From positions 3,287,008 to 3,351,007 of the forward strand of contig NC_068987.1 in NCBI RefSeq assembly GCF_001194135.2: a stretch of 64,000 bases of DNA, read 5' to 3'. The DNA is from Octopus bimaculoides (taxonomy: Eukaryota). Positions 22,752 to 47,274 of this stretch are shown here, in pieces. A program made the translations under genes and the position numbers. The notes under the pieces are model-generated. The model had not been told where the DNA came from. It saw only the letters and a program-made list of their open reading frames with translations, and made no database searches. Position 1 is the stretch's first letter. The number at the start of each line of letters is the position of its first letter.

Positions 22752-25700
22752 TTTTCCATAAACAAAAATTGTTTGAATGTTTAAGTAGTCATCAAGATTT
22801 AGGGAAAATTAGGGGCATTAGAATTTCAGCCCTTTTACAGTGAAGCTGTCATCAAAAAAAGGTTCTTATAGTTCTTCCGTAACGTAAATCACCAAAACTC
22901 TCAGGCACCCAACAAATTACGCTGCTCTAATGCAAGTCTTAGCAAGTTTATTTCAGAGTAATATAAACGTGTTACGGAAAAATGTTGCATACATACATTT
23001 GTACATATGTGCGTATATTATATATACACATATATATAACACTTATATATTTCAAATTTACATGCATATATATCTTTATCTTCATATGCATATATTAATA
23101 CATTTTTTTTTCTCCCAATCATTTTAGTTTTTTTTTTTTTCTCATCTTATACGGTATTTATTCTCACCATGTTTTATAGAATTTTTCTGGTGCAGAATTT
23201 ATATAACTGGATACACTTCCTGATATCAGGTCTTCAATGATAGACGAGAGATATCTTCCATTTAGTTGCCAATTGCAACACACTGGTTGGACAACCTTAC
23301 TATTCTAAACTGGTATCCATATATATATATACAAATGTTTATACATATATGAATATAGATATACAGACAGAGACACACATATATGTATATGTTTATATAC
23401 ATAGCAGATCAAAAATAGCATAACGTTCTAGTTTTGCTACCAAAGACAGCTTCCTCAACTTGCTTCTCAATCCAGCGTAACTGAATGAGGTAACAAAGTC
23501 TATAACAAATCATTCAAATTAATCCAGTAACATCAGTTATTCTGTAAGAGCACAGAAAATTTAACATGCCTGAGAGATGCTTTTTAATTACGTTTTCTTG
23601 GTTCTTTAGTTGGTGCAATATACATCTGAAATGAAACGAATGCATTTGTGTTAATGTTAGTAAATAAGGAGGAGGAGGAGGAGGNNNNNNNNNNNNNNNN
23701 NNNNNNNNNNNNNNNNNNNNNNNNNNNNNNNNNNNNNNNNNNNNNNNNNNNNNNNNNNNNNNNNNNNNNNNNNNNNNNNNNNNNNNNNNNNNNNNNNNNN
23801 NNNNNNNNNNNNNNNNNNNNNNNNNNNNNNNNNNNNNNNNNNNNNNNNNNNNNNNNNNNNNNNNNNNNNNNNNNNNNNNNNNNNNNNNNNNNNNNNNNNN
23901 NNNNNNNNNNNNNNNNNNNNNNNNNNNNNNNNNNNNNNNNNNNNNNNNNNNNNNNNNNNNNNNNNNNNNNNNNNNNNNNNNNNNNNNNNNNNNNNNNNNN
24001 NNNNNNNNNNNNNNNNNNNNNNNNNNNNNNNNNNNNNNNNNNNNNNNNNNNNNNNNNNNNNNNNNNNNNNNNNNNNNNNNNNNNNNNNNNNNNNNNNNNN
24101 NNNNNNNNNNNNNNNNNNNNNCCTGCAATGTTATTCTAAAAATAAACAGTGATGTCATTGAAACCTTGATGCTATGAGATAATCCTTTCTACTACAGGTA
24201 CAAGGCCTGAAATTTGGGGGAAGAGAGTAAGTCGATTACATCGACCCCGGTAGTCAGCTAGTACTTATTTTACCAACCCCAAAAGGATGAAATGCAAAGT
24301 CAACCTTGGCAGAATTTGAACTCAGAACATAGCTGCAGATGAAATACCACTAAGCCTTTTTGTCCCAGCGTGCTAATGATTCTTCCAGTTCTCTGCCTTG
24401 CTATGAGATAATGCAGGATTAATTCAAAACAGTATGAGTAATTAAGCATTAGATTTGACAGATTAGATTTGACAAGCATAAGAGAAATTAATAAGATAGT
24501 GTGCCATATTTGATGGCATAAAAGATGCATGGGTCTGTTAGATGGACCTCAATTTCAGCAGCACATGTGCAGGTAAAAAGATTTTAATGCATTAAAGATT
24601 CTGACATTGGACCAACTCAGTATATTATGGAAGGCCCTGGGGTGGTTTTTTGAGACTTTTTATTGGAAAAAAGGTACATCTTATAAGTCATCAAATAAAG
24701 GATGTTAAATGATGTTTTTCGCATGCCTAAAGCCTACCATAGTGCAGCTACTGCCTATCCGTGCCAAAACTACTCAGATCAAAATATATGCAATGATGCA
24801 GAAATTGTTCTTTAACTATTAATAAATTTATAAAATTGTTTCACTAGTTACATGTCATTTCAATACAGTCTTTTTTTTAAAAAAGGATGTGAGAAATATA
24901 ACAAAGAATATGGGAACCATGGAAATTTTCTCCTTCCCACCTTCCCTTTTGAATTTCTGTTAGTGAAATAAATTTGCAAATCAAAAGTATTGATTAAGAA
25001 TTCACAGAACAAGAATATTCATTGATGAGGCAATTATAGTAATAACCAGACACCCTTCTATGTTCAGTATCAATCATTAGTAAATAAAAGCAGTGTTGAG
25101 CTACAATTAAAAGGAGAGATTACCAAAGTACATGGCCTGAGATTGTTTAAACGATAGCTGTTTCACATTAGTAGTGCAGTCTGTTAATCCTAAAGCAATT
25201 TTACATAAACATAAATGTGACACACAGACACACATACACACCAGATTGAATCACATTATAATTATGTAAATTGATGTAAGCTTGTATACATCAATTTACA
25301 TATTATTTGAATATGAAATGTATGAAAACATTTAGTAAGAATTGAATTAAACATTTACTGCTGACGAAGCAAAGATACAAACTGTTAAAATTGTAATCAC
25401 ATTTGGAATTTTGAAGAAATGCTTTGAGTGTCACCATAAAAGAAATATACACAGAATATATTACATTTAACCATATTAGAGGCACTTAGGGAATCATGCA
25501 CAAAGATTGAAAACGTTAACAATAACAAAACGGGCTGATATAATCACTGCTTTACACAAAAGGGGCTTCGACTCAGCAACAGACCCAGATGGCTTCCCTA
25601 TAATTCTTCTAAAATCAGACAAATAAGCTGTAGCTAAACTACTTCTGTTACTTTTCCAAAGGTTCTTTGGCCCTGGTATGTTCTGCAAGACAATGACAAT

Positions 25701-26140: not shown

Positions 26141-27264
26141 CAGTTTTTATTTATGTTACGTATATATGTATGTAACTTCAAATGTGATGAAGAATTTCTG
26201 TTTGGATTCCTGAGACGATTGTCGTTATCTAAGCATATCAGACAAAATGGCTCAGAGGCATCTCCTCCGGCTCTTTACTTTCTGAGTTCAAATTCTGGGA
26301 TAAACTGTGCTTTTCATTCTGTGAGGGTTGGTAAAGTAAAACACCAGGTAAGCATGTGGTTGATGCAATCAACTAAGCTCCTCTTCAGAAATTGCTGGCC
26401 TTGAGCGAAAATTTGAAAGCACTGATCTATCATGGATGGTGCCCTCATCTGTTAGAATTTAATAATAAAGGATTCAAATTTTGGTACAAGGCCAGCAATT
26501 TCGGGGGAGGGGCCAAGTCGATTATATTGACCCCAGTGCATGACTGGTACTTATTCTATTGACCCTGAAAGAATGAAAGGAAAAGTTGGCCTCAGTGGAA
26601 TTTGAACTCAGAATATAAAGACAGATGAAATGCTGCATTTGTCTGGTGTGCTAATGGTTCTGCCAGAAAATAATAATAATGGTAATGACTAATGAGTGTA
26701 ATCTTCATAATTAAAAAATGTATGGTTATTAATGAAGTGGAGATAGATTGGGAGATGTAGATACATTAAAGCCTTGCTCAAGGGAAAGAGAACCTTATTT
26801 ATGTGTGGATTGAGAGGGAATGCATGCAGGGTGAATGCAGGAAATATTTTGACAAAAATAAAAAAATATTTATTTCGTTTTTTTTCTTTTTTACATGAGA
26901 AGGTGATAAGTGAGAGGCAAGACGAAATTGTTGCTTCTTTTAAAAATAGAAAATGAAATTCAAGAAAAATAAATTTCTTTCGTTTTATAAATATAAACTC
27001 TAATAAATGAAAATGAAACTGAGACATGAATAAAAAAGCAAAAAATTTCATTAATCACAACAATAATAAGGAATTATTTTAGAGTGATATCTCGTTTTNN
27101 NNNNNNNNNNNNNNNNNNNNNNNNNNNNNNNNNNNNNNNNNNNNNNNNNNNNNNNNNNNNNNNNNNNNNNNNNNNNNNNNNNNNNNNNNNNNNNNNNNNN
27201 NNNNNNNNNNNNNNNNNNNNNNNNNNNNNNNNNNNNNNNNNNNNNNNNNNNNNNTATATGTATA

Positions 27265-28345: not shown

Positions 28346-28483
28346 AATTCTGGGTTACATTGGCTAGGAATTTCAAGACGTTTATCAGACATGAGATGGT
28401 CGAGCAGTTCTTGCCGACTCATTTCACCATAAGGTACTCCTCCAACAGTAATTATTTCCCAAAGTAACACACCATAAGACCAT
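28346..28483 (-). CDS. Kinase exon 6 (138 nt, phase 2-2): WSYGVLLWEIITVGGVPYGEMSRQELLDHLMSDKRLEIPSQCNPE(L)
   Basis: Subdomain IX-X motif WSYGVLLWEI; atttcag|A acceptor, TT|gtgagt donor. Confidence 0.94.
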
Positions 28484-28865
28484 CTGAAATTATAAAGCAA
28501 CAGTTAGTATTATTCTTTGACAACTTTTTACAAGTAAATTATTATCATGAAATATTATTGTAGTAAACAGAAAAATAAAGACATTTTAAGAGTAAATTTA
28601 ATCTAAGTTGGATATAAAAATTTATGTCGTTTTTGATTCTGGACCAAATGACCTGTGAGATTTATGACATTGCAGTCATGTTTCAGATCTTTGTGATATC
28701 TTTGAATGGCTAACAGACTTGGTTATTTATAGTTGAGTTTCATGGACACAGTGTGCAACTGGAGACAGAATATGAACCATTGACCATTGGAATACTTGAA
28801 GTGAGAGTATTATTATTTTTATTATTATTAGTTTGTCTATTGTTGACAATGACAAAGGACATTAT

Positions 28866-29132
28866 TTGGGAGAAGACGAAGGGCCACAGTGTGTCCAGCT
28901 GTGGCCAATCAGTCCAATGCTTTCTGAGAAGGCTCTGCCACAGGTCCAGGCACTGGTGGTCTGTTGGGACTGAAAGCAAGGAGCTGGCTCTGGACTTGCA
29001 TAGTCCATGTTTTCTTTGTGCCCCTGCAATCCCATTCTGCTCATAAGAGATGGTGCCTCTATTGCTGCAGCTTCAGTGGTCTTGTGCTTGCATTTCCCAG
29101 GTGCCACTGTTGATCTCAAAGCTCTTCAGGGA
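28866..29132 (-). mobile_element. RTE-clade LINE 3' fragment (C-terminal zinc-finger region)
   Basis: EAAAIEA...WTCGRAFSESIGLIGHSWTH matches the RTE/BovB-type CxxCxRxFxxxIGLxxHxRxH end. Confidence 0.75.
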
Positions 29133-29308
29133 GGCTTGGAGTAAATGAGAGTAATAAGCAGTAATCAGTGGGTTCAAAGTTATTGCCTCCTTAAAAAACA
29201 GGACACAGTATCATGGGCAACCTTTTCGAGAAGCAGACTGCATGAAACAGGGCTCAACATCAGGCAAGCCACACTACTAAAACAATCAAGTAACTTTCCG
29301 TTAGTCAT

Positions 29309-29536
29309 GTCATTCAGAGAGTCATTCAGAGAGTCATTCAGAGAGTCATTCAGTGAGTCATTCAGTGAGTTATTCAGTGAGTCATTCAGAGAGTCATTCA
29401 GTGAGTCGTTCAGTGAGTCGTTCAGAGAGTCATTCAGAGAGTCATTCAGTGAGTCATTCAGAGAGTCATTCAGTGAGTCGTTCAGTGAGTTGTTCAGAGA
29501 GTCATTCAGAGAGTCATTCAGAGAGTCATTCAGAGA
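29309..29536. repeat. 12-bp VNTR, 19 units of GTCATTCAG(A/T)GA
   Basis: Units counted directly; three TGAGTCA junction motifs. Confidence 0.95.
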
Positions 29537-29636
29537 GTCCTGCAGGTCAAAGTTGATTTATGCTAACTCAGTTTATTTAATAATTTTAACATATTAAGAA
29601 ATTTAGAATTATATACATATTAAAGTTTTAACTTAC

Positions 29637-29701
29637 AAATCACTCATAGTACTTGTCCAACCTGTTTTCAGTGTTTCAATTGCTTGCCACTTATATTCGT
29701 C
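29637..29701 (-). CDS. Kinase exon 5 (65 nt, phase 0-2): DEYKWQAIETLKTGWTSTMSD(L)
   Basis: KWQAIETL matches Tie/RET KWMAIESL; tgtttcag|GAC acceptor, TT|gtaagt donor. Confidence 0.9.
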
Positions 29702-30169
29702 CTGAAACAAAACAATCAATAAATGAAAAACAATTTCTCCCAGATCAACATTTTGTTTTTAGGTATAAAAAAAATTTGCGAATTTTCAAAATATTTAATC
29801 TGAACTGATAATCCAGTATAAACAAAAGATAATCTCATTAACCTGAAAAGAGAAGGAAAATGAAGGTGGGGTCCACTGTTTGTATCCTCTCTTATATTCA
29901 CCAACTTGTTAAACGATGATGATGATCATGATGATGATGATGATGATGATGATGATCCCTTCATCAGAGACAATGTGAGAAAATGATTAAGCAATAGTTA
30001 ATTTAGATAAGATACGAAATAGAGAGTAAAGTGGAGGAATGAAAATAGATGTGAGATATGCAGGGATATTGCATTTGTAGATCCATTATTTAGGCAGAAT
30101 GGTATACATATAAGATTCCTATACCATTTTCTTTTTCTTTTTGAATAATTAGGCCATTTTTTCTGGAAC

Positions 30170-30487
30170 AAAAAGCAAATTTGCACAATTTTCTTATTCC
30201 AGTTCAAGCTAGGCCGTAAAGCTGCTGAAACAGCTCGCAATATCAACGATGCATTTGGCCCAGGAACCACTAATGAACGTACAGCACAATGGTGGTTCAA
30301 GAAATTTTGTAGTGGTGACGAGAGTCTTGAAGATGATAAGTGTAGAGGTCGGCCATCAGATGTTTACAATGATCAACTAAGAGCCTTAGTCGAAGCCAAT
30401 CCATGCACAACTGTTCGAGAGCTTGCTTCTGAATTAGACGTCATGTATACGACAATTTCCAATCACTTGAAAGAGATTGGAAAAAAA
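30170..30487 (+). mobile_element. Mariner (cecropia/Hsmar1-like) transposase N-terminal fragment
   Basis: KKQICTIFLFQFKLGRKAAETARNINDAFGPGTTNERTAQWWFKKFCSGDESLEDDKCRGRPSDVYNDQLRALVEANPCTTVRELASELDVMYTTISNHLKEIGK, stop-free but truncated. Confidence 0.92.
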
Positions 30488-30797
30488 TATGTGCATCTGA
30501 ATTTAAAGGTTAAAAACCGTAAGAACTTTCTTGACAACCTAATAGATAAACCAAGGCTTATATTTTTTTAAGAAAAATAAGAAAATGGAGAAACATCAAT
30601 TAATAAGTATATTTGTTAACTAAAAAAATAAACATGATCTCTAACAGCTGTTATGATTCATACTTTAAAGATTATAATTGTATTAATTAAATCATTTTAT
30701 AAAGCAGAATATCCTCTGAGGCAGAAAAAAAAATTATACCAGTGTATTATTAGTTGTTAATTACATGGAACATTAACAGCAAATAATATATACATAC

Positions 30798-30896
30798 CTT
30801 CATTACGGCTGGTTTTGTGAAACCAAAACCTCCAATTTTGGCACGTAATATCTCATCAAGGTATATGTTCTGTGCACATAAATTACCATGGATTGT
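30798..30896 (-). CDS. Kinase exon 4 (99 nt, phase 0-0), catalytic loop and DFG region: TIHGNLCAQNIYLDEILRAKIGGFGFTKPAVMK
   Basis: Aligns to IHRDLAARNxLV...KIxDFGL with HRD>HGN and DFG>GFG; ttccag|ACA acceptor, AAG|gtatgt donor. Confidence 0.93.
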
Positions 30897-31051
30897 CTGG
30901 AAATGAAAATACTTAGCATGAATATGAAACCCAGAGGAGAGTAACATCACAAACAGACACGGAAATGACAGTGCTCAATAGCTGTAGTTACTGAGTCAGT
31001 TGGGAAGATGTGAACAAGATCTCAAACCTCTGGCATGCTGTAATGAGTCTG

Positions 31052-31210
31052 GGACATTTACCCCCTAGGGACAATAACCCACCAAGGACAATTACCCCCG
31101 AGGACAACAGATGATGATTTAAAACTTCTTAATATATTGGAGAGGGGGTAATTAACCAAGGGGGATAGTTGTTGTTGGGGGTAGTTGTTGTTGGGGGTAA
31201 TTGTCCTGAT
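31052..31210. mobile_element. Small fold-back/MITE-like element with inverted arrays of GGACAATTACCCCC
   Basis: ggacatttacccc, ggacaataaccc and ggacaattacccc on the left; gggggtaattgtcc-type units on the right. Confidence 0.55.
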
Positions 31211-33267
31211 ATGGTTGTAATATCTCTCGTAAGATCCTAAACTGCTGAGATACTGATGCAAGGCAATCAATAGTTTTGATTTTGCGGTCCATCATCAAAG
31301 AATCCCACCCACCCAAAACCATGGTCATGCTATTGTTTCTTGCTAATTTTCAAATACTTTACATAAGATACAAACTTGTTACCAGTTCAAAATATGCTTG
31401 AGACATATTTGAACCATCCACAAAATAGCCATCCACTGTATTTTGTCACAGATAACATTTCTCAACATAGACAAATAGGAGTAAAAACACTGGGTCAGTT
31501 CACAGTGCTTGCAACCCCTGTATTTTACACAAGATACACGTCCGGGCTTATAAACATGGTCTCTAGATGGTTCTTACCAGTAACTGTCTATGCTTAGAGG
31601 CATTTGTTCAAGAAGTCCACAGAGAAAACTTGGGCTAACATTGATTTGTATTATGAAAGCGGCAAGAATTGATCTGAATATAATTACAACTAGTTCAATA
31701 GCAACATGCTGTCTCTTGTGTTGGATGTAAAATATATTGACAAAATGGTTCTTCATCATAATTACTCTGCTGTCGATTATTTACAGCATAACCTTTGTCA
31801 CACATTGTTATAGGGACAGACTGTGCACTGCACTATGGCAAGGTACCCAGCAGCATCTACTGAAATATTAAAAAAGCCTTGGAATCTCTCCTTAACCCTT
31901 TCCTGTTTAGACTGGCCAAAATTTTCTACCAGTTTTATGTTCAAACTAGCTAGATCCAATGTTTCACACCTACCCTACAATGTCATTCTAAAACTAGACT
32001 TACATAATTTATTGTATAGTGAAATTGTACACCCTCCCAGTAAAAATTGGTAGTAGTCAGCCATTATAAATAAACCAGTAGCCAGTTGTCAAGAGAAGGT
32101 TGAGAAGGTCGAGAGTATGTGTGGACTGTGTTGATAGTTGTGTCTGTGCTGATATAGTAATCATACTGTGATATTGAATGGACGTTATAAACGATCCAAC
32201 CTTTTGAGGATAATAACACTGTAGGACTGGGGGTCATACAGTGCCAGATAAAAACATTCTATTGACGACTTTAGAATATAACAATCTCTGTCAGAGCGAC
32301 AACCATCGTCAAAAGACAGATACAAAAGTGGCAAAAAGAGCTCTTTACAACATAATTGAAATCTTGAAGCTACGAGATGATGCACAATTAATTTAAAACA
32401 ATGTGGATAAATAAACATTATATTTGACATAGTAACTGGAATGTGAAAGGGTTAACGCTACACCAATACTCGTCAATAATTGGTCGTTATTAATGACTGA
32501 TGTACCATTTAAACCTAGCTATTAGGTACGGTATTATTGCTCACTATGAAGACAGTCAATGGCTGCAGCTTTCAGCTCTCAATAAACTTCTTAATTATAT
32601 TTCTCTGTAGAAACTATCCATATCAATTATCTCAAAGATAATAGATTACCAATCCTAATATCTTATGATATTTTTGGAGAATTCTGTGGTGGTTATTTTA
32701 CTGCTAGAAAATTACATTTTCTCATTCAACAATGCAGAAACAAGCTACACATTTTCAGTAATCAAAAGAAGAACCATTCTATTTTTTTTTTTTTATATAT
32801 GAATTAGAGTGATTACTGAGATGGCAATATTGACTGGGTCGTATCTCCCTGGAGCAAATCAGTTTTGTCAAATTCCATTAGTTCTAGAAGTTTAGATATT
32901 GAAAAGTAGAGAAAAAACAAACAGTAATAACAAAAGAAAGAAGACAATAAAAATATATGCATTTGTGGTAGTATTTTAACAAAACCAAGGTACCTAAAAC
33001 CTATTTTGAAGTGGTGGGCATTAGGAAGGGCATCTAGCTGAAGAAACCACAGCGAAACAGACATTGGAACTTGGAGCAGTCCTTTGACTTGCCAACTCCT
33101 GTCAAACCATCCAACCCATGCCAGCATAGAAAACGGGCATTAAATGACAACACATAATGATGATGATGATAATGATGATGATAATGATGATATCTATAAT
33201 ATTTCAAACTAACTAAAGAACATGTTAGTATAAAAAAATAGGTGCAAACAATAAATTTATTAAATAC

Positions 33268-33440
33268 CTGATGATTAGAAAGATATAGCAAGCCACAGGC
33301 AATTTCAGCGGCAATATATAGCAATTTCACTTGGAAGAAAACCAAAACGTTGGGTTCTTTGTCTGTTCCTTTACGCATCTTTAACAAGTAAGATCTTAAA
33401 TCTCCACTTTCAGCATAATCCAGGGCAATGTAATGCCGGT
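33268..33440 (-). CDS. Kinase exon 3 (173 nt, phase 1-0): DRHYIALDYAESGDLRSYLLKMRKGTDKEPNVLVFFQVKLLYIAAEIACGLLYLSNHQ
   Basis: Hinge YIALDYAESGDLRSYL and alphaE IACGLLYL; catcag|AC acceptor, CAG|gtattt donor. Confidence 0.93.
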
Positions 33441-33649
33441 CTGATGAATATTAGGAATGGTAAAATGCATAAACAAGTCATGAATTTTAAACAGTAACAA
33501 TAGATAATGAATAAAAGTGATTACATGTAAAATAAACATCATACTTGTATCATAAAAGAAAACTTTTCCATATCTACTTTTATTATTATTATCACCATTA
33601 TTATTATTATCTATTATTATTATTATTATTGTTATCATCATCATCATGA

Positions 33650-33958
33650 TAGCACGTAGAAAGCACCATTGGTGTGTGGCCCATGCCAGTGGTGCCTGAC
33701 TGGCACCCGTGCCGGTGGCATGTAAAAAGCACCATTGGAGTGTGACCGATGCCAGTACCACCTGACTGGCACCCGTGCCATATATTCATCACGTAAAAAG
33801 CACCCCCTATACTCTTGGAGTGGTTGGCATTAGGAAGGGCATCCATCTGTAGAAACCTTGCCAAATCAGATTCAAGCTTGGTGCAGCTTCCTGCTTGCCG
33901 TCCAACACATGCCAGCATGGAAAGCGGACGTTAAACGACGACGACAATGATGATGATG

Positions 33959-33960
<2 letters not shown>
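33650..33960 (+). mobile_element. Family C retroposon with internal approx. 65-bp tandem units and (GAT)n tail
   Basis: gcacc...gatgccagtgg/accacctgactggcacccgtgcc units, then ggttggcattaggaagggcatcc tail. Confidence 0.8.
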
Positions 33961-34007
<47 letters not shown>

Positions 34008-34013
<6 letters not shown>

Positions 34014-34330
34014 TCACTGCCTGGAATCGAACTCGGAATCTTGGGGTTAGTAGCCCGCGCTCTTAACCACTATGCCATATGCCCCAAGATTCCAAGTTCA
34101 ATTCCAGGCAGTGGCCTGAATAATATTAATAACAACAACAGCAACAGCAGCAACAACAACAACAAATACCTTAAGAATGAAAACCCAGGTTCGAAATTTC
34201 CCCAAGACACCTGATGAAGGCTGGAGGGTATATCAACCGAAAAGTTGTGTTAACAACAAATAAGAGGAGGACAAGTATCCGTCAAATGTAAATAATGTAC
34301 ATAATTCTTCATCTCTCAAATATAGAACTG
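34008..34330. mobile_element. Head-to-head fold-back copy of the tRNA-head/Penelope-tail composite, with degenerate hammerhead (34206-34251, +)
   Basis: 34008-34046 is the reverse complement of 34082-34120; tail matches 6258-6395. Confidence 0.78.
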
Positions 34331-34376
34331 TATAATTTTAAAGTATCTGAAAATAAAATAAAATAGAATTACAAAC

Positions 34377-34487
34377 CATTAGCTACAGCATCAGTTATAA
34401 AACTGAGGATGTTAGGATGCTGCCCAAGCGCTTCGGCCATAGCTTTTGCTTCCTTTAAATCTCCTCTTTCGTCATCGGATAAACCAT
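34377..34487 (-). CDS. Kinase exon 2 (111 nt, phase 1-1), alphaC-beta4: DGLSDDERGDLKEAKAMAEALGQHPNILSFITDAVAN
   Basis: LGQHPNIL matches RTK LGxHPNII; ttttacag|AT acceptor, G|gtttgt donor. Confidence 0.9.
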
Positions 34488-35633
34488 CTGTAAAATAAGA
34501 GGAATATAGATTATGATTTTGATATTGGTAAAATACAAGATGCAATCAAAATGAATAAAGAAATTACTTAGCCAACCAAATGCCAGTTGTTTGTTGTATT
34601 TCAAGTGAATTGCTTACGGACATTGCATTTGAAGAGGTGTGATTAACGATATTTAGTCGTTAAAGGTTGTCATTATTAGCTCTGGTTAATTCTAGAGGAC
34701 ATTTTAAGTCATAAATCGCAATTTTTAAACTACAAAAATATCGACTGTTTTGAAAACGTTTTTTTGTTTGTTTTTTTTTTGCATTTCCCATCAAAATATC
34801 ATTCATTGATATTTCATACACCTTCGCATTTGATACTATAGTTTCAAAAAAAACTAAAATGTTTATTATTTCAATTGAATAGAAAAGGATAAATATGCTT
34901 GTTTTTCAGTGATCCACATTTGGGACTTTTCGGAAAATTTATCATACTTTCCAAAAGAATTCACATATGAAGAAAATTTAAATACTATATATTATTCTAA
35001 CCCCCAAGACACCTGGCAAATCCAAAAAATGTAAATAAAAGAATTTGGCAGTTAATGGGTTAACAACACAGCTGAATCTACACCTCATGGCTAGAATAGT
35101 AATTACATGTTTTGTTTTGTTCAATAGAAACAAACACAAGGCATTTTGGTTTAGCCTTCTTGCTTGTTCTCCTTTTCAGTGACTAGTTTCAGTTATTGGA
35201 TTACAGCCAAGACACGTCACAGCCGACAGAGACCATCACCATCTCCTCCCCGCCACCACTGTTGCCGCCATCACCACCACCTCTTCAACAGTGTTTCAGG
35301 AACACGTTTATTTAATCAATCTATATTTTATTGATTAGTTGAGTTACCATATTCTGACACAAAGCAGCTTATTTTTCACAAAAGCCATTGTGTCAAATGC
35401 ATAAACACAAACATGGAATACCACAAGCGAAAACATGTACGCTTGTTTGTGTGTGTCTATACACACACACACACACACACACATAAACATATATAAAGAC
35501 ATACACACATAAACGTACATAAAAACATACATAACATAGATATATATATGTATACGTATATGTGTGTGTGTGTATGCATATCTATTCATCTGTATTATAT
35601 TATCTATATTAAATGTATGTGCATGTGTATGTT

Positions 35634-35691
<58 letters not shown>

Positions 35692-35955
35692 CACTCACAC
35701 ATACACACATACATAAATACAAATATATATATATATATAATATAGATAAATCGATAGATAGATAGATAGATAGATAGCAAGAGAGATAGCTAGATAGATA
35801 GATAGATAGGTAGAGAGAGAGAGAGAGAGAGAGAGATATGCATACACACACAAACACAACTATGCTTCTGCACAGTTTCTGTCAACCACATTCCACACAC
35901 ACTCTCTCTCTCTCTCTCTCTCTCTCTNNNNNNNNNNTCAACCACATTCCACACA

Positions 35956-36012
<57 letters not shown>

Positions 36013-37546
36013 CCTCTCATACAGAGGAGATTCATTGTCATATTCAGTGCAGCACATTTTGACTGTTGTCGTCACAGTGGCACCTTGTGAGCATGCCAAA
36101 GTGTCTCCTCTCTCCCACACAAAGATGCAACAAAAGATCTCAATTAAATTAATAACGAGCTGTTGTTAAGGCAGTGAGTGAGATGGCAGGATCCCCAGCA
36201 GACTGGGCAAGATGCTTAGCAGCATTTCATCTGTCACTAGGTTCTGAGTTCAAATTCTGCTGAGGTTGACTTTTCCTTTCATTCTCTCGGGGTCGATAAA
36301 ACAAGCACCAAATGAACACTTACCCACTTCCCCAAAAAAATTGCTGGCCTTGTGCCAAAATTTGAAACAATGGCAAGAGTGGATGGTACCTCTCTAAATG
36401 TACACCAGTGAGTCGGAGAGAAGGAATTGGAGAGGGTACTTGCTCCAGGGGTTACAGGGAAATCTCAGACAGTGGGGTTCCTCGATTATCCCTAGAGGCC
36501 TTCCTGTATCGGAAGATATGGAATCTCCATGAGAACTACATTAAGGGTACACATGTCAATGGGGTGCTGAACCCCTTGCATGTTAATGTCACAAGCAGGC
36601 TGTTCCGTTGATCAAATCAGCTGGAAGCTTCATCATTGTCATAACCGACAGATTGCTCAGCCTTGTCTATGAGGAGAGAAAATACCCAACATTGCTTTAC
36701 TCAGTAATGCCCAAGGTAAAACTATCAGGTGCATTGAGGATAAAGATACAGCATAATCTACTGATCAGAATCTCAATTTGGTTCCTTAGCAACCATTTCT
36801 GCTAGCCATCACATTCATGTTTTCAGTATTAAGCTTTGCCTTCTTCCCTATGAACAAGTTTGATTGATTTTTAATCTGTTCCTTCATTTCATCTTATCTT
36901 TTCACTTACACCCCTCCCAACTTTAATTTATATTCATTTCTCTCTCTCTCTCTCTCTGCCTTTGTTCCTTCTTCCTTCTTCTACCTCACTTAAAGAAAGT
37001 CTTTTTATTATTATATTTTTCTCCTTCTAATTTTCTGATAACAGTCTCAGCCGAAGTTACAAGACCTATTCTCTTTGGCAAACGAATATACTTCATTTTT
37101 TAAAATCTTTCCACTGCATCGATTCTTAATGATGCTAAGCTCAGTAAATCATACCAAATTATATTGATTACATTTGTTTCGTTCATGCTGATTGATAAGG
37201 AACCGCTTCTTGCAGTATTTCAACAATTCAGATTGTTAAAAAGACTGATAAAAATAATTGAAAACTTAAAAGAAAAATCAAATAAAACAGTAAAAAAATT
37301 AATCATTATTAAGCTGTTTCATTTATGATAAAATAAATAAAAATAGGCATAAAATAATAATGATGATGGTTTTATTAACTGTGGCAATGGTTAAAAGCTT
37401 GCTTCCAAAATATGTGGTCTTGAGTTCAGTCCCACTGCATGGTACCTTGGGCAAGTGTTTTCTACTATAGCCCCAAATCAAACAAAGTCTTTTGAATGAA
37501 TTTGGTAAACTACAACTAAAATTGTGTATATGTATGTGTGTGTATA

Positions 37547-37578
<32 letters not shown>

Positions 37579-37594
37579 AATCAAAATGGAAGTT

Positions 37595-38020
37595 GTAGTT
37601 ATGGCTGATGCCAGTGCCACCTGAATGGCTCCTGTGCTGGTGGCATGCAATAAGCACAATTCATGCGTAGGTCATTGCCAGTGTCACCTGACTGGCTCCC
37701 CATGCTGGTGGCACGTAAAAAGCACCATCTGAACATGATTGATGCCAGTCCCCCACACCAACTGGTTCCTGTGCCAGTAGCACGTAAAAACCACCATCCA
37801 AATGTGGCCGATGCCAGTGCCACCTGACTAGCTCCTGTGCCGGTGGCCCATAAAAAGCACCCACTACACTTTTGGAGTGGTTGGCATTAGGAAAAGCATC
37901 TAGATGTAGAAACTTTGCCAAATTAGATTGGAGCCTGGCACAGCCTTCTGGCTTGCCAGTCCTCAGTCAAACCGTCAAACCCATGCCAGCATGGAAAATG
38001 GACATTAAATGATGATGATC
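37595..38020 (+). mobile_element. Family C retroposon with four approx. 67-bp tandem units
   Basis: Units start near 37601, 37667, 37735 and 37804; family C tail follows. Confidence 0.82.
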
Positions 38021-38290
38021 ATAATAATATATATGCATGAATGTATGTGTATGTCTGTTTGTGTGTAGTCTTGTCTTGTTATCATGTGATGGCTGTAAAT
38101 GAGCATCACTGTCATGCAAACGAGGTTGTTTGTATCAAGTCTTTCATGCAAAATAGGTCTGGCCACGGGGAAATATTACCTTGCTTGGAAAGAGGTGAGG
38201 GTTGGTGACAGGAAGGGCATCCAGCCACAGAAAATCTGCCTCCGTAAATTCTGTATGACCCATGCAAGCACGGAAAAAAATGGATGTTAA

Positions 38291-38327
<37 letters not shown>

Positions 38328-38403
38328 CGACAACAACGATGACAACAATGACAACCATAAAATTAGAATGACAACATAAGAAGAATTTAAATAAAAGCCT
38401 CAC

Positions 38404-38572
38404 CTTTAACGATTAGTAAAGCTACTTCAGTAGTATTGTCCCAACTACTTAAACTTCTTGCTTTCCAAATATCTCCAAAACATCCAGTGTTTAATTTGCG
38501 ATCCGTGATACCAACAACTAATTCTCCAATGGCAATCAATTGGTGTTTAGATTGAGGAATAATCAACTCTTG
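38404..38572 (-). CDS. Kinase exon 1 (169 nt, phase 0-1), subdomains I-II: QELIIPQSKHQLIAIGELVVGITDRKLNTGCFGDIWKARSLSSWDNTTEVALLIVK
   Basis: G-loop LNTGCFGDIW; VALLIVK aligns to VAVKxLK; ttacag|CAA acceptor, G|gtgagg donor. Confidence 0.9.
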
Positions 38573-39393: not shown

Positions 39394-39578
39394 CTTGTCA
39401 TCTGTGACTTCTGGTGCTTCATCATCCCGTGTGATGATAGTTTTATCTTTTTTCTTTTTGCTCACCAGCAACATAATAGCCATTAAGATGATACAAGTGA
39501 AAGTAAATAATCCAGTGAAAACTGCCAGAGCTATGGCCAAATTCTTCATGAGTTTTCGATAATCTTCTGCTAGTAATC
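39394..39578 (-). CDS. Transmembrane exon (185 nt, phase 1-0): RLLAEDYRKLMKNLAIALAVFTGLFTFTCIILMAIMLLVSKKKKDKTIITRDDEAPEVTDDK
   Basis: About 26-residue hydrophobic stretch followed by a KKKK stop-transfer cluster; cgttcag|GA acceptor, AAG|gtaggg donor. Confidence 0.92.
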
Positions 39579-41174: not shown

Positions 41175-41312
41175 GTTTGTCGCAAACACTGCCAATGTAT
41201 CCACCCAAACAGCCATCAGGGCATGTTCCGTTGAAGGGATTGCATGTTTTATTATTGGCACAAAATCCACAGACAGTTGAGCAGTTGAAGCCATAAAAAC
41301 CAGGCTCACATT
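41175..41312 (-). CDS. EGF-like exon 9 (138 nt): ECEPGFYGFNCSTVCGFCANNKTCNPFNGTCPDGCLGGYIGSVCDK
   Basis: 8-Cys module; tttag|AA acceptor, C|gtaagc donor. Confidence 0.93.
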
Positions 41313-42094
41313 CTAAATACAAGAAAAAATGAGTGAAAAATTTAATTTTCAAAAATAAGCTTTTTGTTTATTGTTTGGAATAAAGCAAAAATTCTTGTCT
41401 AAGTTTAATATTTAGTTTAAAAAGGTTCATTAATTTTTTTCTTAATTTATTAAAATCCACTCAGTTTTAGAACTGATTAAACAAAGTTTCAGAGATTATT
41501 AAATAATTTAAACAATGCATCTATCCATCCATTTTCTCCAACCACTATTACCGAGGGGGTCATAGGGGTACAATCCTCAGGGTACAATCTCCCCGTAGGG
41601 TCCTGTCAGAAGCAACTACCATTACATTTTCTGGTTGGATTCCCAAGCATGACTAACTAAGACTTGGGATATTATCCAACCATTTTGCTCTTGGTTTACT
41701 TCTGCCAGTTGGCTTGGCTTGAAGAATGCATTTTGTGATTCTAATCATACATTCATAGAATTGGAACTGTGACCTTTCTCTACAGAGAAGTAATGGTTTG
41801 ACTTGGAGAAAATCTCTGATCTCTCAGCCATGCTCTCAGTTGAGCAATGATACTCCAGATACCCTTTGGTGGAACCTCATTCCAGCCAATTGTTTTCTCT
41901 TTTGGTTCTTGCCCAACATTCATGACCATAAATAAAGATTGGCATGGAAACCAAACTGAAGAAAACGATAATCATATTTAAGAACATCTCAATACTTAAC
42001 ATTATTAATTCATTAATAATAATAATTCATTTATTAAACAACTTAATTTCGCAGCAGTTTATCATTCCAACAAGATATAATCTTGTTATCTTAC

Positions 42095-42235
42095 CTTCAG
42101 TGCACATATCTCCAGTCCATCCATTTTCACAATGATTTTTGGGACAGAAACCTTCCACAGAGTCACAAGTTACTCCGTCTTTGCAGAAACCACAATAGTA
42201 GGAACAGTTTAATCCAAAGGTGCCATGTTCACAAT
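42095..42235 (-). CDS. EGF-like exon 8 (141 nt): YCEHGTFGLNCSYYCGFCKDGVTCDSVEGFCPKNHCENGWTGDMCTE
   Basis: 8-Cys module; gaccag|AT acceptor, G|gtaaga donor; absent from the ORF track. Confidence 0.92.
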
Positions 42236-43264
42236 CTGGTCAAAACATTTCAAAAGAACATTTTATTATTTCTTTTATTCTGCTTATTTTGAAAAGCAAT
42301 ATTTGTGTAAAAAATACTTTTTTTTACATGCTTAAAAAAATAAATATCAATTGTTAGTGATGTCAGTGCTTCTTACTGTCAGATCATTTCAAAAAGAAAA
42401 TATTCTTTTCTACTCTACAATGATTACAATGATGATGATGGTAATGATGGTGATAGTGGTAGTGGTAGTGATGAGAATGATGATGGTAATGATAGTGATG
42501 ATAATGGTGGTGGTGGTGGTGGTAACGGTGGTGAGAACATGCCTGTATTTCAATCAGTGTTATTTGAGTTCAAGTTTACCAAAGTAGACCAGTGTTGTGC
42601 CTCGTTTATATCAAAGCCTAACTTCACAATTAAAACCACAAAAATAAAGGTTTGTCAAATAAATACCAGATTAAAAATAAGTAGCGAGATTAATATAAAT
42701 CACAAACACTCATGAAAGTAAGTGCTCCAGCATGGCCACAGTCTAATAACTGAAACCCCCGTAGAAAAATAACAATAAAACAATTGTGCAAGTTTTGCAT
42801 AATTCAGTCTTCTGTATTTTGTGAAAAGTCTATTTTAGAAGTCTCTTTGTAAAGCACTTAATGTGTGTGTGTGTGTGTATGTGTGTGTTTGTGTGTGTAT
42901 GTGTGTGAGGTACACACTCGATTTATTTCTATTCAATTTCATACTTGGATGGTTTACAATAAAAGTAGCTTTCATAAATATTGCATCAAAAAGATTTTGT
43001 TAATTTATTACCTAGGAAGCCATAAATGAATAAATGAAAGAGAATTTCTATGAAGTGAGAACTGGTATCAACAACACCCAGCACTTGAGACACATAAGTA
43101 CTATTCAGTCGTATTAGTGTTTAAGCTCAATTGATGTTATCGATCCGTTCAGTGTTCAATTTCTCATATATTATCTTCATGTCGCTTTCACTGTGTTAAA
43201 TCATATCATCAACAAAATGGCATCGAAAGAAGATCGAGGCATTTTTTATTCTTCTGTCAGTGCC

Positions 43265-43645
43265 ATGTAAGAAAGCACTTGTGCTGGTACCACATGAAAA
43301 AGCACCTGTGTTGGTACCGCATAAAAAACACCTGTGCTGGTACCACATAAAAGAGGACCTGCGCTGGTACCACATAAAAAAAGCACCTGTGCTGGTACCA
43401 CATAAAAAACACCTGTGCTGGTACCACATAAAAAAAGGACTTGTGCTGGTACCACATAAAAAAAGCACCTGTGCTGGCGCTATGTCAAAAGTACCGAGTA
43501 CACTCAGTAAATTGATTGGTGTTAGGAAGGGCATCCAATCATAGAAAACATGTCGAAACAGATCACTGGGGCCTGGTGCAGCCCTCTGGCTAACCAGCTC
43601 CTATCAAACTGTCCAACCCATACCAACATGGAAAACAGACATTAA

Positions 43646-43677
<32 letters not shown>

Positions 43678-43700
43678 GAAGATGAGGATGAGGATGACCA
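43265..43700 (+). mobile_element. Family C retroposon whose internal array is an approx. 29-bp repeat (CACCTGTGCTGGTACCACATAAAAAAG, about 8 units, 43268-43480)
   Basis: Tandem units read directly, followed by the family C tail and (GAT)n. Confidence 0.82.
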
Positions 43701-44516
43701 CTCCCTGTATCTCTCTCCAGCCATCAGCCATCAAGCATTTACCTCTCACACCCACCACAAATCTTATTTACCTACCCACGTCACTTCTCTTTCTTGTAAC
43801 TTGAGCGTATGCCCTGATAAATCTTCTCCGCCATCCCCCTTCCCTTCTAAACGGGGTAACCACATATTTCCTCCTACAGCAAGATTCCTGTTTCAGGCCC
43901 TCTTTCATATTTTAACATCTCATCAGCCGGCACAAAGACCCCCCCCCCCTCTCAATATTACTTCTCCATCTTCAATTGAGTGGGGGTGGTCTTGTCTTGC
44001 AAGTCAGTTGGTGACCTCACTAGTGCTGGCGCCACATGAAGAGCCCCCTGTCCACACACTGTAAAGTGGTTGATACTAGTAAGGTCTCCAGCCCCAGAAA
44101 CCATGCCAAGGCAGACACTGGAGCTTGCCAACGTCTGTCAATCTGTCCAACCCATACACCATCATCATCATCATCAGAATGGAAAATAGATGATGATGAT
44201 GGTGATGGTGATGGTGGTTGGTGATGGATAAACGCTATGTAGAAACACTGTCTTCAAAGACCTAGACAATTTCATTGACCACAATACTAGTAGACTAGTT
44301 ACAGACTGAAAAGCCTGTTATATTAAAAATTCATGTTACACACAATGAGAGTTAATAAAGAACAGGTGAACTACTTTGTAGTAAAAACATGGAAACATTG
44401 CATGTGTTCAGCAGATCACCAGTTCAAGCCTGTGTCACTGGGGTTAGGATGCTTAGGTAATACATATATGTGTATGTACACATACATAAATACACACACA
44501 CACACACATATATATA

Positions 44517-44689
44517 TAGGTGCAGGAGTGGCTGTGTGGTAAGAAGCTTGCTTCCCAACCACATGGTTCCGGGTCCAGTCCCACTACATGGCACCTTGGG
44601 CAAGTATCTTCTACTATAACCTTGGACCAACCAAAGCCTCGTGAGTGGATTTGGTAGATGGAAACTGAAAGAAGCCTGTCGTATATATG

Positions 44690-44740
<51 letters not shown>

Positions 44741-44995
44741 GTGTGTGTGAGCGTGTGTGTTAGTGTGTACTCGTCTTGACATCTTGTGATGGTTGTAAAT
44801 GAGCATCACTGTCATACAAGTGAGGTTGTTTACTTGCAGTCTTCCATGAAAAACATGTCTAGCTATGGGAAAATATTACTTGGAAACAGGTGAAGATTGG
44901 TGGCAGGAAGGACAAGCAATCATGGAAAATCTGGCTGGACTAATTCTGTCTGACCCATGCAAGCATTGAAAAGTAGACAGTAAATGATGATGATG
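44517..44995 (+). mobile_element. SINE family B head + (GT)n + alternative (GAT)n-ending tail
   Basis: ggtgcaggagtggctgtgtggtaagaagc head; tail similar to 38050-38340 and 40060-40300. Confidence 0.75.
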
Positions 44996-45206
44996 ATGAG
45001 GTATGTATACTGTATACTAAGACAAAAATGTGATTAGTTGATGCTTGCTACAATACGTGCAACTTACATACAAATCTGACATAAGCCTAGGGATTGTCTA
45101 TATTTGATCTATTTTCAGTTCCAAGTTATTGTCTTTGGTTTTCAATTCAGGCAACATTGACACCACTAGCACAAGGATTCTTAAGATACGTCAGTTATAT
45201 ACTTAC

Positions 45207-45344
45207 AAAGTGAGCAGTTTGCGCCTCTCCAGCCTGTCTGACAACTGCTAACACACACACCAGTTGATTTATTGCAAACTTCGCTCTCATCAATACAACG
45301 GCATTTCTCTTGACAGTTTGGTCCAAAGGTATAATCATCACATT
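45207..45344 (-). CDS. EGF-like exon 7 (138 nt): ECDDYTFGPNCQEKCRCIDESEVCNKSTGVCVSSCQTGWRGANCSL
   Basis: 8-Cys module; ttccag|AA acceptor, T|gtaagt donor. Confidence 0.93.
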
Positions 45345-45592
45345 CTGGAAGATGAATAAAAGACATTAAATACTGATTTCAAATTTTTATTACAAAGCCA
45401 GCAATTTTGGGGAGGAGGAGGAGGCAAGTCCATTATATCGACTCCAGTGTTTAACTGGTACTTATTTTATCAATCTCAAAAGGATGAAAGGCAAAGTTAA
45501 CCTCAGCAGAATGTGAACACAGAACATAAAGACCGATGAAATGCTGTGAAGCATTTTGCCCCAACATGCCAATAATTCTGCCAGTTCACTAC

Positions 45593-45823
45593 CTTAACCC
45601 TTTCAATACCAACCTGACTGAAACTGCCCCTGGCTCTGTAGTACAAATGTCTTGTTTTCATAAGTTTTGAATTAAAATCTTCCACCAAACCTTAGTCACA
45701 ATTTATGTTCCTAACACTAGCTTCATGATAACTAAGTTATTTTACTAAATTCTTTGTTATATTTAAAATTAATTGAAAGAAACCCAGAGCATCTCAAAAT
45801 AAATACAGTAACAAAAGGGTCAA
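45593..45823. mobile_element. piggyBac-like MITE, family 2
   Basis: ttaaccctttcaatacc...aaaagggtcaa; matching end ggtatcaaaagggttaa at about 50670-50686. Confidence 0.65.
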
Positions 45824-45894
45824 GGTCATTAAATATTAAAAGAAAGAAATAAAGAAAACTAAAATTGATAAAAAAAAAACTGAAACAAATGCCT

Positions 45895-47005: not shown

Positions 47006-47041
<36 letters not shown>

Positions 47042-47255: not shown

Positions 47256-47274
47256 AATATGTAATTAACATTAC

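What the first reader, a model, noticed from the sequence alone, without database searches (positions are those of the whole stretch)
28346..38572. Three catalytic motifs lost together while the fold is preserved
Seen: G-loop LNTGCFG (first Gly>Asn), beta3 VALL in place of VAxK, HRD>HGN, DFG>GFG and APE>AIE. The alphaC Glu position appears to be Ala by my alignment. Structural motifs (HPNI, hinge, KW, SDxWSYGVLLWEI, PY, C-x-x-EL), the frame and all splice sites are intact. This pattern suggests purifying selection on a catalytically dead scaffold, not a decaying pseudogene, and predicts little or no Mg-ATP binding.
Basis: partly seen in the sequence, partly recalled or inferred. Interest (0 to 1): 0.82.

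Follow-up and report, generated by a model that had tools for sequence, protein, structure and literature searches.

The report
Conserved dead-kinase receptor in cephalopods
The octopus gene annotated as "angiopoietin-1 receptor" encodes a cell-surface receptor whose kinase domain has lost every residue needed for catalysis, yet it has been kept almost unchanged in octopuses, argonauts and cuttlefish, so it is a working non-enzymatic signalling receptor and not a dying gene.

Summary
It lies on the minus strand, in exons 12-17 of a 19-exon Octopus bimaculoides gene (RefSeq XP_014773562.1).

**What is lost**
- G-loop Gly1, the beta3 Lys (VALL), the alphaC Glu, the HRD Asp (HGN) and the DFG Asp (GFG).
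- A 7-residue deletion also removes the activation-loop Tyr segment.
- "APE>AIE" is not a loss: active Tie2 and its relatives read AIE.

**Assembly gaps**
- The flagged gap (35928-35937) is an intronic (CT)n join with 46 identical bases on both flanks. It has no effect on the frame.
- A different gap (27099-27254) hides exon 18.

**Evidence the gene is functional**
- Orthologues in O. sinensis, O. vulgaris, Argonauta hians and a cuttlefish share all the dead motifs; exon lengths and phases, checked in O. sinensis and A. hians, match.
- Spliced full-length mRNAs occur in 13 RNA-seq assemblies.
- dN/dS of the dead domain is 0.02-0.04. That is lower than the ectodomain (0.07-0.10) and equal to the catalytically intact paralogue (0.018).
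- AlphaFold gives a confident kinase fold (pLDDT 87).

**Conclusion**
It is a duplicate of the pan-molluscan EGF-repeat Tie-like RTK and a new receptor pseudokinase, seen so far only in coleoids. The co-receptor or scaffold mechanism is inferred, and ATP binding cannot be predicted from sequence.

The parts
53839..53985 (-). exon 2: end of the signal-peptide region plus EGF repeat 1 (exon 1 lies upstream of the window)
   Evidence: Exact match to P0274 and conserved in the orthologues. The acceptor is ttaattaacag|.
41175..51551 (-). exons 3-10, one 8-Cys MEGF/laminin-type EGF repeat each: 51551-51414, 50887-50750, 49455-49318, 48034-47894, 47412-47275, 45344-45207, 42235-42095, 41312-41175
   Evidence: All are phase 1, 138 or 141 nt long, identical in length to O. 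sinensis and A. hians. Pfam EGF_laminin and EGF_PEAR1L hits are weak.
39394..39578 (-). exon 11: transmembrane helix (LAIALAVFTGLFTFTCIILMAIMLLV) plus the juxtamembrane segment
38404..38572 (-). exon 12: degenerate G-loop (LNTGCFG) and beta3 (VALLIVK, catalytic Lys>Leu)
35928..35937 (.). the flagged assembly gap; it lies in intron 12 inside a (CT)n microsatellite
   Evidence: 46 identical bases flank it on both sides, and it has no coding effect.
34377..34487 (-). exon 13: alphaC helix (Glu>Ala) and the HPNI motif
33268..33440 (-). exon 14: beta5, hinge, alphaD and alphaE
30798..30896 (-). exon 15: catalytic loop IHGNLCAQN (HRD>HGN) and GGFGF (DFG>GFG), plus the start of the shortened activation loop
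29637..29701 (-). exon 16: the rest of the activation loop and KWQAIETL (AIE is normal for the family)
28346..28483 (-). exon 17: alphaF-alphaG (WSYGVLLWEI ... CNPEL)
27099..27254 (.). assembly gap that hides exon 18 (100 nt; alphaH/alphaI, ESLIKNCWKENERERTPSDL...)
   Evidence: The O. sinensis intron alignment resumes 8 nt after its exon 18, exactly at window 27098.
23584..23625 (-). exon 19: C-terminal tail MYIAPTKEPRKRN plus the stop codon, carrying the only conserved non-core intracellular Tyr

Best explanation
**What it is.** This is a functional, expressed receptor pseudokinase, found so far only in coleoid cephalopods. It is a type I membrane protein. It has a signal peptide, nine 8-Cys EGF repeats, one transmembrane helix and a Tie-like tyrosine-kinase fold.

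**What is shown.**
- The kinase fold has lost G-loop Gly1, the beta3 Lys, the alphaC Glu, the catalytic Asp and the Mg-binding Asp.
- It has also lost the activation-loop Tyr segment.
- The gene arose by duplication of the pan-molluscan EGF-repeat Tie-like receptor kinase; the two genes share intron positions and phases.
- The duplicate diverged to about 32% identity with every active relative.
- It has since been held almost unchanged for the whole history of octopods and cuttlefish.
- The dead domain is under purifying selection as strong as that on the live paralogue's kinase domain, and stronger than that on its own ectodomain.

**What is inferred.**
- It cannot transfer phosphate.
- It signals through its conserved pseudokinase surface, as an allosteric partner, scaffold or substrate of an active kinase. 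The most economical candidate partner is the active paralogue, which has the same kind of ectodomain. HER3 with HER2, and EphB6 with EphB4, are the precedents.
- The conserved C-tail Tyr (M-Y-I-A-P) may act as a docking site. Read-through of the last intron gives an isoform without this tail, which could tune signalling.
For: **Motif losses:**. The triple loss is unique to this clade among the 190 relatives' domains in which all three positions could be read.

**Orthologues with the same motifs:** O. sinensis, O. vulgaris, A. hians, Acanthosepion pharaonis and another decapodiform contig.

**Gene structure:** the same 19 exons and phases in O. sinensis and A. hians (lengths identical except exons 2 and 11). 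The window holds 16 of the 19.

**Expression:** an uninterrupted 823-aa ORF sits on 3.3-4.3-kb contigs from 13 SRA-run assemblies, which can only be spliced mRNA.

**dN/dS:**
- kinase-like domain 0.016-0.046; ectodomain 0.067-0.097 by NG86 and ML (YN00 gives 0.16-0.23)
- decapodiform pair 0.014
- active paralogue's kinase domain 0.018

**Octopus-cuttlefish identity:** 0.90-0.91 for the pseudokinase domain against 0.66-0.69 for the ectodomain.

**Shared intron phases and exon lengths with the active paralogue:**. The pan-molluscan distribution of that paralogue.

**Structure:** AlphaFold mean pLDDT 86.8, pTM 0.83. Foldseek top hits are FGFR, EphB4 and RET kinase domains, probability 1.0.

**Tail:** conserved Tyr and a read-through isoform.
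Against: - No biochemical data exist. Catalytic inactivity, nucleotide binding and the partner are all inferred from sequence.
- Exon 18 of the O. bimaculoides copy is unread because it lies in a gap. Its integrity in this species is inferred from flanking synteny and from the orthologues.
- Direct transcript evidence comes from a cuttlefish species, not from an octopus.
- Whether Nautilus has the gene is unknown.
- The pTyr-docking reading of the tail rests on one conserved residue.
Confidence: 0.8

Rival explanations
1. It is a decaying pseudogene: a dead copy of a Tie-like kinase gene drifting neutrally.
For: Five catalytic residues are lost. The domain is only about 32% identical to active relatives. 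The RefSeq model of the O. bimaculoides copy has an aberrant C-terminus, and one exon is not readable in the window.
Against: - omega is 0.02-0.04, with Fisher p down to 1e-60.
- No stops or frameshifts occur in the annotated orthologues of five species, or in the two exons read from a sixth-species contig, and the exon structure is the same in O. sinensis and A. hians.
- Spliced mRNAs exist.
- The substituted residues are themselves invariant.
- The missing exon falls exactly in an N gap, and the odd C-terminus is a transposon-like exon 20 kb away.
Confidence: 0.01
2. It is still an active kinase that uses a non-canonical catalytic arrangement, such as a relocated Lys as in WNK, or Mg-independent transfer as claimed for CASK.
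For: Very strong constraint on the domain. The catalytic-loop Asn, the HxN His and the DFG Phe/Gly are retained. A Lys follows four residues after the lost one (LIVK) in octopods.
Against: - That Lys is Arg in the cuttlefish.
- The third G-loop Gly is kept, so there is no WNK-type Lys.
- Both the catalytic base and the metal-binding Asp are gone, with no acidic replacement nearby.
- The activation-loop Tyr segment is deleted.
- Equal constraint is also expected for a scaffold.
Confidence: 0.05
3. It is a decoy or adhesion receptor. Only the EGF ectodomain matters (ligand sink or homophilic adhesion) and the intracellular part is a passive anchor.
For: MEGF/PEAR1-type EGF ectodomains mediate contact-dependent recognition; this rests on established knowledge and was not tested here. 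PTK7 and EphB6 have adhesion roles.
Against: The intracellular domain is 3-4 times more constrained than the ectodomain. dN between octopus and cuttlefish is 0.055 against 0.23, Fisher p=1e-17. A passive anchor would not be held at 90% identity.
Confidence: 0.08
4. It is a nucleotide-binding conformational switch. The domain still binds ATP without metal and uses this to toggle partner binding. This is a refinement of the main explanation and not an alternative to it.
For: EphB6 and EphA10 lack the same three residues yet bind ATP with a KD of about 95 uM, and Mg destabilises them. The regulatory-spine residues His and Phe are kept.
Against: G-loop Gly1 is also lost here. Among the human receptor pseudokinases, the four scored (PTK7, ROR1, ROR2, RYK) that have a substituted G-loop glycine all have occluded sites (Table 2). 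There are no coordinates or assays to judge the pocket.
Confidence: 0.3

Closest known systems
Pan-molluscan EGF-repeat Tie-like receptor tyrosine kinase (A. hians GAB1609011.1 = P0159; O. vulgaris CAI9740443.1; orthologues in Littorina, Patella, Haliotis, Crassostrea, Pomacea and others)
   Same: Same architecture: EGF repeats, transmembrane helix, Tie-like kinase fold. Same intron phases and near-identical exon lengths through the kinase region. A C-tail Tyr at the same position.
   Different: The paralogue keeps GxGxxG, VAVK, the alphaC Glu, HRD, DFG, the activation-loop Tyr and a Y-x-N tail. It is 65-67% identical across molluscan classes, whereas the pseudokinase is 31-35% identical to all of them.
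HER3/ERBB3
   Same: A receptor pseudokinase derived from an active family. It works as an allosteric activator and phospho-Tyr scaffold for an active paralogue.
   Different: HER3 keeps the beta3 Lys and DFG, binds ATP, has a different ectodomain and carries many YxxM sites. Here all three catalytic residues are gone and only one tail Tyr is conserved.
EphB6 and EphA10
   Same: They have lost the beta3 Lys, the HRD Asp and the DFG Asp together; EphA10 even reads HRG...GFG. They sit within an otherwise active family, and EphB6 is trans-phosphorylated by an active paralogue and recruits SH2 proteins.
   Different: Both keep an intact GxGxxG, and EphA10 keeps the alphaC Glu. The Eph ectodomain and SAM domain are absent here. 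Both are vertebrate genes.
Vertebrate Tie1/Tie2
   Same: Tie2 is the best solved-structure sequence match (E=3.5e-34). It shares HPNI and WMAIESL-type motifs and has EGF repeats in its ectodomain. The Tie1-modulates-Tie2 pairing is a functional analogy drawn from established knowledge.
   Different: Tie receptors are catalytically competent and have Ig and FN3 domains. Pfam finds neither domain here. No Tie-family member is among the known receptor pseudokinases.
PTK7, RYK, ROR1/2
   Same: Receptor pseudokinases that act as co-receptors and scaffolds, some with altered G-loops and occluded ATP sites.
   Different: They belong to pseudokinase-only families conserved across animals, act as Wnt co-receptors, keep the beta3 Lys and the HxD Asp, and have different ectodomains.

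Membership tests
Protein tyrosine kinase fold (Pfam PF07714) | Significant full-length match to the kinase-domain profile | tested here: met
   E=4e-46 over profile positions 4-235 for the window exons. E=2.6e-51 over positions 4-257 of 258 when exon 18 is included. AlphaFold pLDDT 86.8, with Foldseek hits to FGFR, Eph and RET kinases.
Pseudokinase (sequence definition) | Absence of at least one of the beta3 Lys, the HRD Asp or the DFG Asp | tested here: met
   All three are absent: Leu, Asn and Gly respectively. G-loop Gly1 and the alphaC Glu are also absent.
Pseudokinase (functional definition) | No phosphotransfer activity | not testable with these tools
   Requires a biochemical assay.
Receptor tyrosine pseudokinase | Single-pass membrane receptor with an ectodomain, a transmembrane helix and an intracellular pseudokinase domain | tested here: met
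   Nine EGF exons, a hydrophobic transmembrane exon and the kinase exons lie in one conserved gene model. The signal peptide is present in the orthologues.
Functional gene under purifying selection (as opposed to a unitary pseudogene) | dN/dS well below 1, intact frames in orthologues, and transcription | tested here: met
   omega 0.016-0.046. Intact 19-exon structure in O. sinensis and A. hians. Spliced mRNA contigs.
Tie receptor family (strict sense) | Ig-EGF-Ig-FN3 ectodomain | tested here: not met
   Pfam finds only EGF-type repeats, with no Ig or FN3 domain.
Tie receptor family (strict sense) | Kinase domain closest to Tie among solved structures | tested here: met
   Tie2 chains are the top four PDB sequence hits. 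Foldseek, however, ranks FGFR first.
Tie receptor family (strict sense) | Binds angiopoietins | not testable with these tools
   No ligand data.
MEGF10 / Draper / PEAR1 family | EMI domain, EGF_PEAR1L repeats and a non-kinase tail with NPxY or ITAM motifs | tested here: not met
   EGF_PEAR1L scores 28.9 bits, below the 37.5 cut-off. There is no EMI hit, and the tail is a kinase fold. The O. sinensis name 'MEGF6' is an automatic label.
Nucleotide-free (class 1) pseudokinase | No ATP or cation binding | not testable with these tools
   Sequence is not predictive. EphB6 and EphA10 lack the same residues but bind ATP.

The most novel reading that the evidence does not exclude
The dead receptor is a coleoid-cephalopod innovation that forms an obligate pair with the ancestral EGF-repeat Tie-like kinase. 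This would be a convergent counterpart of the vertebrate Tie1/Tie2 or HER3/HER2 modules, recruited in the lineage that independently evolved a closed, endothelium-lined circulation. A squid cell atlas already reports an 'angiopoietin-1 receptor' transcript as a marker of putative circulatory smooth-muscle-like cells, but which paralogue that transcript represents is unknown.
Probability: 0.12. Interest if true: 0.75.

Novelty: new member of a known kind. Interest (0 to 1): 0.45.

Why it matters
**For the pseudokinase field**
- Receptor pseudokinases are a small, well-studied class. The eight human ones come from the Eph, HER, PTK7, ROR, RYK and STYK families, and none is Tie-like.
- This gene adds a lineage-restricted, very degenerate example whose active parent gene still sits in the same genome.
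- Its history is clean: duplication, a burst of change to about 32% identity, then stasis at about 90% identity between octopods and cuttlefish.
- That makes it a natural system for asking what a kinase fold is selected for once catalysis is gone.

**For genome users**
- The names 'angiopoietin-1 receptor' and 'MEGF6' wrongly imply either an active Tie kinase or a MEGF protein.
- The O. bimaculoides RefSeq model has an artefactual C-terminus caused by an assembly gap.

Tried and rejected
- **Provisional last exon.** I first took 27877-27767 (YRKSLVRCPTFQVLLQSFEKL...) as the last exon because it resembles helix alphaI. I rejected it because no orthologue uses it, and the true exons 18 and 19 are different.
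- **Possible frameshifted relic near 28090-27990** ('NHCW' / 'RTSLMTLKQVIQSL'). This was considered and dropped for the same reason.
- **First word-indexed protein search.** It found only one exon-sized ENA ORF and a nematode kinase. The exhaustive HMMER search was needed to find the orthologue.
- **Multi-domain HMMER hits P0004-P0006.** These are unnamed metagenome proteins whose scores are inflated by many kinase repeats, so they are not relevant.
- **AlphaFold with a 6-sequence alignment.** It gave pLDDT 53 and was discarded. A 62-sequence alignment gave 86.8.
- **Missing genomic DNA.** None was on record for the cuttlefish proteins P0153 and P0276 or for O. vulgaris P0295. I used the cuttlefish mRNA contigs and P0316 instead.
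- **Cuttlefish comparisons.** dS against the cuttlefish is saturated, so only dN and identity are quoted for them.
- **Octopus counterpart of the cuttlefish 23-aa juxtamembrane insert.** I looked in the intron between the transmembrane exon and exon 12 and found nothing convincing.
- **Bacterial promoter/terminator scan.** I ran it by mistake on eukaryotic sequence, so it is uninformative.
- **Literature searches.** Cephalopod or mollusc RTK pseudokinases, an octopus kinome and the accession number returned nothing on this gene.

Full report
**1. What is at the coordinates**

The window has 34% G+C and contains eight N gaps. I reconstructed six exons with canonical AG/GT sites, good polypyrimidine tracts and mutually consistent phases:
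- 38572-38404
- 34487-34377
- 33440-33268
- 30896-30798
- 29701-29637
- 28483-28346

Their joined translation matches Pfam PK_Tyr_Ser-Thr at E=4e-46. Among solved structures it matches the Tie2 kinase domain best, at E=3.5e-34.

**2. The flagged gap**

- Positions 35928-35937 lie in the intron between the first two of these exons, inside a (CT)n microsatellite.
- The 46 bases on either side of the Ns are identical. The gap is therefore a join of two overlapping contig ends.
- The exons on either side join in phase 1 to give ...LIVK-D-GLSDD..., exactly as in every orthologue and in mRNA.
- The gap has no bearing on the reading frame.

**3. The motif claims**

Alignment to Tie2 and to the four closest catalytically intact relatives gives:

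| Motif | Canonical | This gene |
|---|---|---|
| G-loop | GxGxxG | NTGCFG |
| beta3 strand | VA[IV]K | VALL |
| alphaC helix | Glu | Ala (a Glu sits one residue earlier) |
| Catalytic loop | HRDxAARN | HGNLCAQN |
| Activation loop start | DFG | GFG |

- 'APE>AIE' is not a loss. Active Tie2 reads WMAIESL, and Ile is the middle residue in 83 of 302 aligned relatives.

Among the 190 aligned kinase domains drawn from the 150 best hits of an exhaustive search and the cluster members in which all three positions could be read, the combination Lys>Leu, Asp>Asn, Asp>Gly occurs only in this orthologue group, in 20 sequences.

**4. The whole gene**

- An exhaustive HMMER search of 1.84 billion representative proteins found one protein 97% identical over the query. 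Every other hit was 41% identical or less.
- That protein is 'angiopoietin-1 receptor-like' of Argonauta hians.
- Its 90% cluster holds O. sinensis ('MEGF6'), two O. vulgaris isoforms, and O. bimaculoides XP_014773562.1 'angiopoietin-1 receptor'.
- XP_014773562.1 matches the window exons residue for residue, so the window is O. bimaculoides.
- A second cluster, 75% identical over 98% of the length, comes from the cuttlefish Acanthosepion pharaonis.
- Mapping the proteins to their genomes gives 19 exons in O. sinensis and A. hians, with the same phases throughout and the same lengths except exons 2 and 11. The window carries exons 2-17 and 19 with matching lengths.
- The protein has a signal peptide, nine 8-Cys EGF repeats (one per exon), a transmembrane helix, the pseudokinase domain and a short tail.

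**5. The missing exon**

- Exon 18 (100 nt, helices alphaH/alphaI...ESLIKNCWKENERERTPSDL...) is not in the readable sequence.
- Aligning the O. sinensis intron sequence to the window shows that homology resumes 8 nt after O. sinensis exon 18. It resumes exactly at window 27098, the edge of the N gap 27099-27254.
- The exon is therefore hidden by the assembly and has not been lost.
- The RefSeq model fills the hole by splicing to an exon at 7587-7434, which gives a helix-turn-helix-like C-terminus. That is an annotation artefact.

**6. Is it decaying?**

All dead motifs are shared by octopods, the argonaut, the cuttlefish and a further decapodiform genome contig.

Codon-level dN/dS:

| Comparison | Pseudokinase domain | Ectodomain |
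|---|---|---|
| O. bimaculoides - O. sinensis (NG86) | 0.032 | 0.097 |
| O. bimaculoides - A. hians (NG86) | 0.021 | 0.067 |
| O. sinensis - A. hians (NG86) | 0.021 | 0.083 |
| Same three pairs, ML estimates | 0.016-0.042 | 0.068-0.095 |

- The tests of nonsynonymous against synonymous changes give Fisher p from 1e-13 to 1e-60.
- An independent decapodiform pair, covering exons 12-13 only, shows 17 synonymous changes and 1 nonsynonymous change, for omega 0.014.
- Octopus-cuttlefish amino-acid identity is 0.90-0.91 in the pseudokinase domain and 0.66-0.69 in the ectodomain.
- As a yardstick, the catalytically intact paralogue over a comparable species pair (A. hians vs O. vulgaris) has kinase omega 0.018 and 95.4% identity. 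The dead domain has 0.019 and 96.8%.
- The same 823-aa ORF is uninterrupted on 3.3-4.3-kb contigs assembled from 13 sequencing runs. For a 19-exon gene that spans tens of kilobases, this can only be spliced mRNA.

The pseudogene reading is excluded.

**7. Origin**

- The active paralogue is a pan-molluscan gene with the same EGF-repeat plus Tie-like architecture. It occurs in gastropods, bivalves and cephalopods at 44-55% identity in the best local alignments.
- Through the kinase region the two genes have the same intron phases and nearly the same exon lengths: 169/111/173/99/65/138 against 166/111/188/114/71/138. The length differences account for the activation-loop deletion.
- The pseudokinase is therefore a duplicate of that gene.
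- Active relatives are 65-67% identical across molluscan classes. The pseudokinase is 31-35% identical to all of them. Of 103 columns invariant in four active relatives, it keeps 56.
- No orthologue outside coleoids appeared in either search. Nautilus could not be assessed.

**8. Fold**

- With a 62-sequence alignment, AlphaFold gives mean pLDDT 86.8 and pTM 0.83. All canonical kinase secondary-structure elements are present. Confidence is low only in the juxtamembrane segment, the kinase insert, the activation loop and the tail.
- Foldseek's top matches are FGFR1-4, EphB4 and RET kinase domains, at probability 1.0 and target TM 0.73-0.86.

**9. Mechanism**

*Shown:*
- The catalytic residues are absent.
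- No Lys is conserved as a substitute. The K of LIVK is Arg in the cuttlefish, and the third G-loop Gly is kept.
- The domain is under constraint as strong as that on a working kinase.
- The only conserved intracellular Tyr outside the kinase core is in the tail (M-Y-I-A-P). Active relatives have Y-[IM]-N-[IV] at that position.
- Read-through of the last intron gives a conserved isoform without that tail.

*Inferred:*
- The receptor signals without catalysis, through its pseudokinase surface and tail.
- The most likely mode is as a partner of an active kinase, with the paralogue as the obvious candidate.
- HER3 and EphB6 are the precedents.

*ATP binding:*
- ATP binding as such cannot be predicted. 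EphB6 and EphA10 lack the same three residues and bind ATP at about 95 uM. On the other hand, the four human receptor pseudokinases with an altered G-loop glycine whose ATP sites have been scored all have occluded sites (Table 2).

**10. Novelty**

- The gene models exist in public databases under automatic names.
- None of my searches of the held literature found any description of this gene, of a Tie-like pseudokinase, or of cephalopod receptor pseudokinases.
- A 2026 review lists eight human receptor pseudokinases, none of them Tie-like.
- I rate this as a new member of a known kind. The finding is solid and tidy, and moderately interesting.

Noticed in passing
window 7434-7587 (minus strand): This exon supplies the last 51 residues of RefSeq XP_014773562.1 (CIEIEAKRIEISALLCEGHKSDIAKRLNVSRVTVHRVVERL...). 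It looks like the helix-turn-helix of a Tc1/mariner-type transposase and is spliced in only because the true exon 18 is in a gap.
   Followed up: partly
window 47894 side of intron 6 (donor GCAAGT): The intron after exon 6 uses a GC donor in both O. bimaculoides and O. sinensis, but GT in A. hians.
   Followed up: no
L003 92209 onward; L002 90499 onward: The alternative C-terminus of 'isoform X3' (EVCEKEISL*) is simple read-through of intron 18. The first residues (VCE) are conserved in O. sinensis, A. hians and cuttlefish transcripts, and this isoform lacks the tail Tyr.
   Followed up: partly
L004-L009 (cuttlefish mRNA contigs), between the transmembrane exon and the first kinase exon: Cuttlefish transcripts occur with and without a 23-residue juxtamembrane insert (TDYPHVYPACPVRVTRHSCTGQG) that contains two Tyr. 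I found no counterpart in the octopus intron.
   Followed up: partly
window 27767-27877 (minus strand): An open frame reading YRKSLVRCPTFQVLLQSFEKL resembles kinase helix alphaI but is not used in any orthologue model. It is probably a chance resemblance.
   Followed up: partly
window introns, e.g. 38018-37926, 33139-33060, 27475-27338, 4164-4060 (minus strand): Many copies of one interspersed repeat, whose translation reads ...FN[VI]HFPCWHGLDGLT.DWQARRL..., sit in the introns, alongside abundant (AC)n, (CT)n and (AT)n microsatellites.
   Followed up: no
related proteins (oysters, abalone, snails): The same MEGF-type EGF ectodomain is joined in other molluscs to tyrosine-phosphatase domains as well as to kinase domains. 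One ectodomain type has therefore been combined with opposing enzymatic tails.
   Followed up: no
L001 (ENA ERZ21867824 ctg111309l) 3952-4120 and about 10277-10387: A contig filed under a metagenome-style ENA assembly accession carries exons 12-13 of a decapodiform orthologue (LTTGYFG, VALLIVK). It is 93.6% identical in DNA to the cuttlefish transcript, so it is cephalopod genomic DNA of a second decapodiform species.
   Followed up: partly
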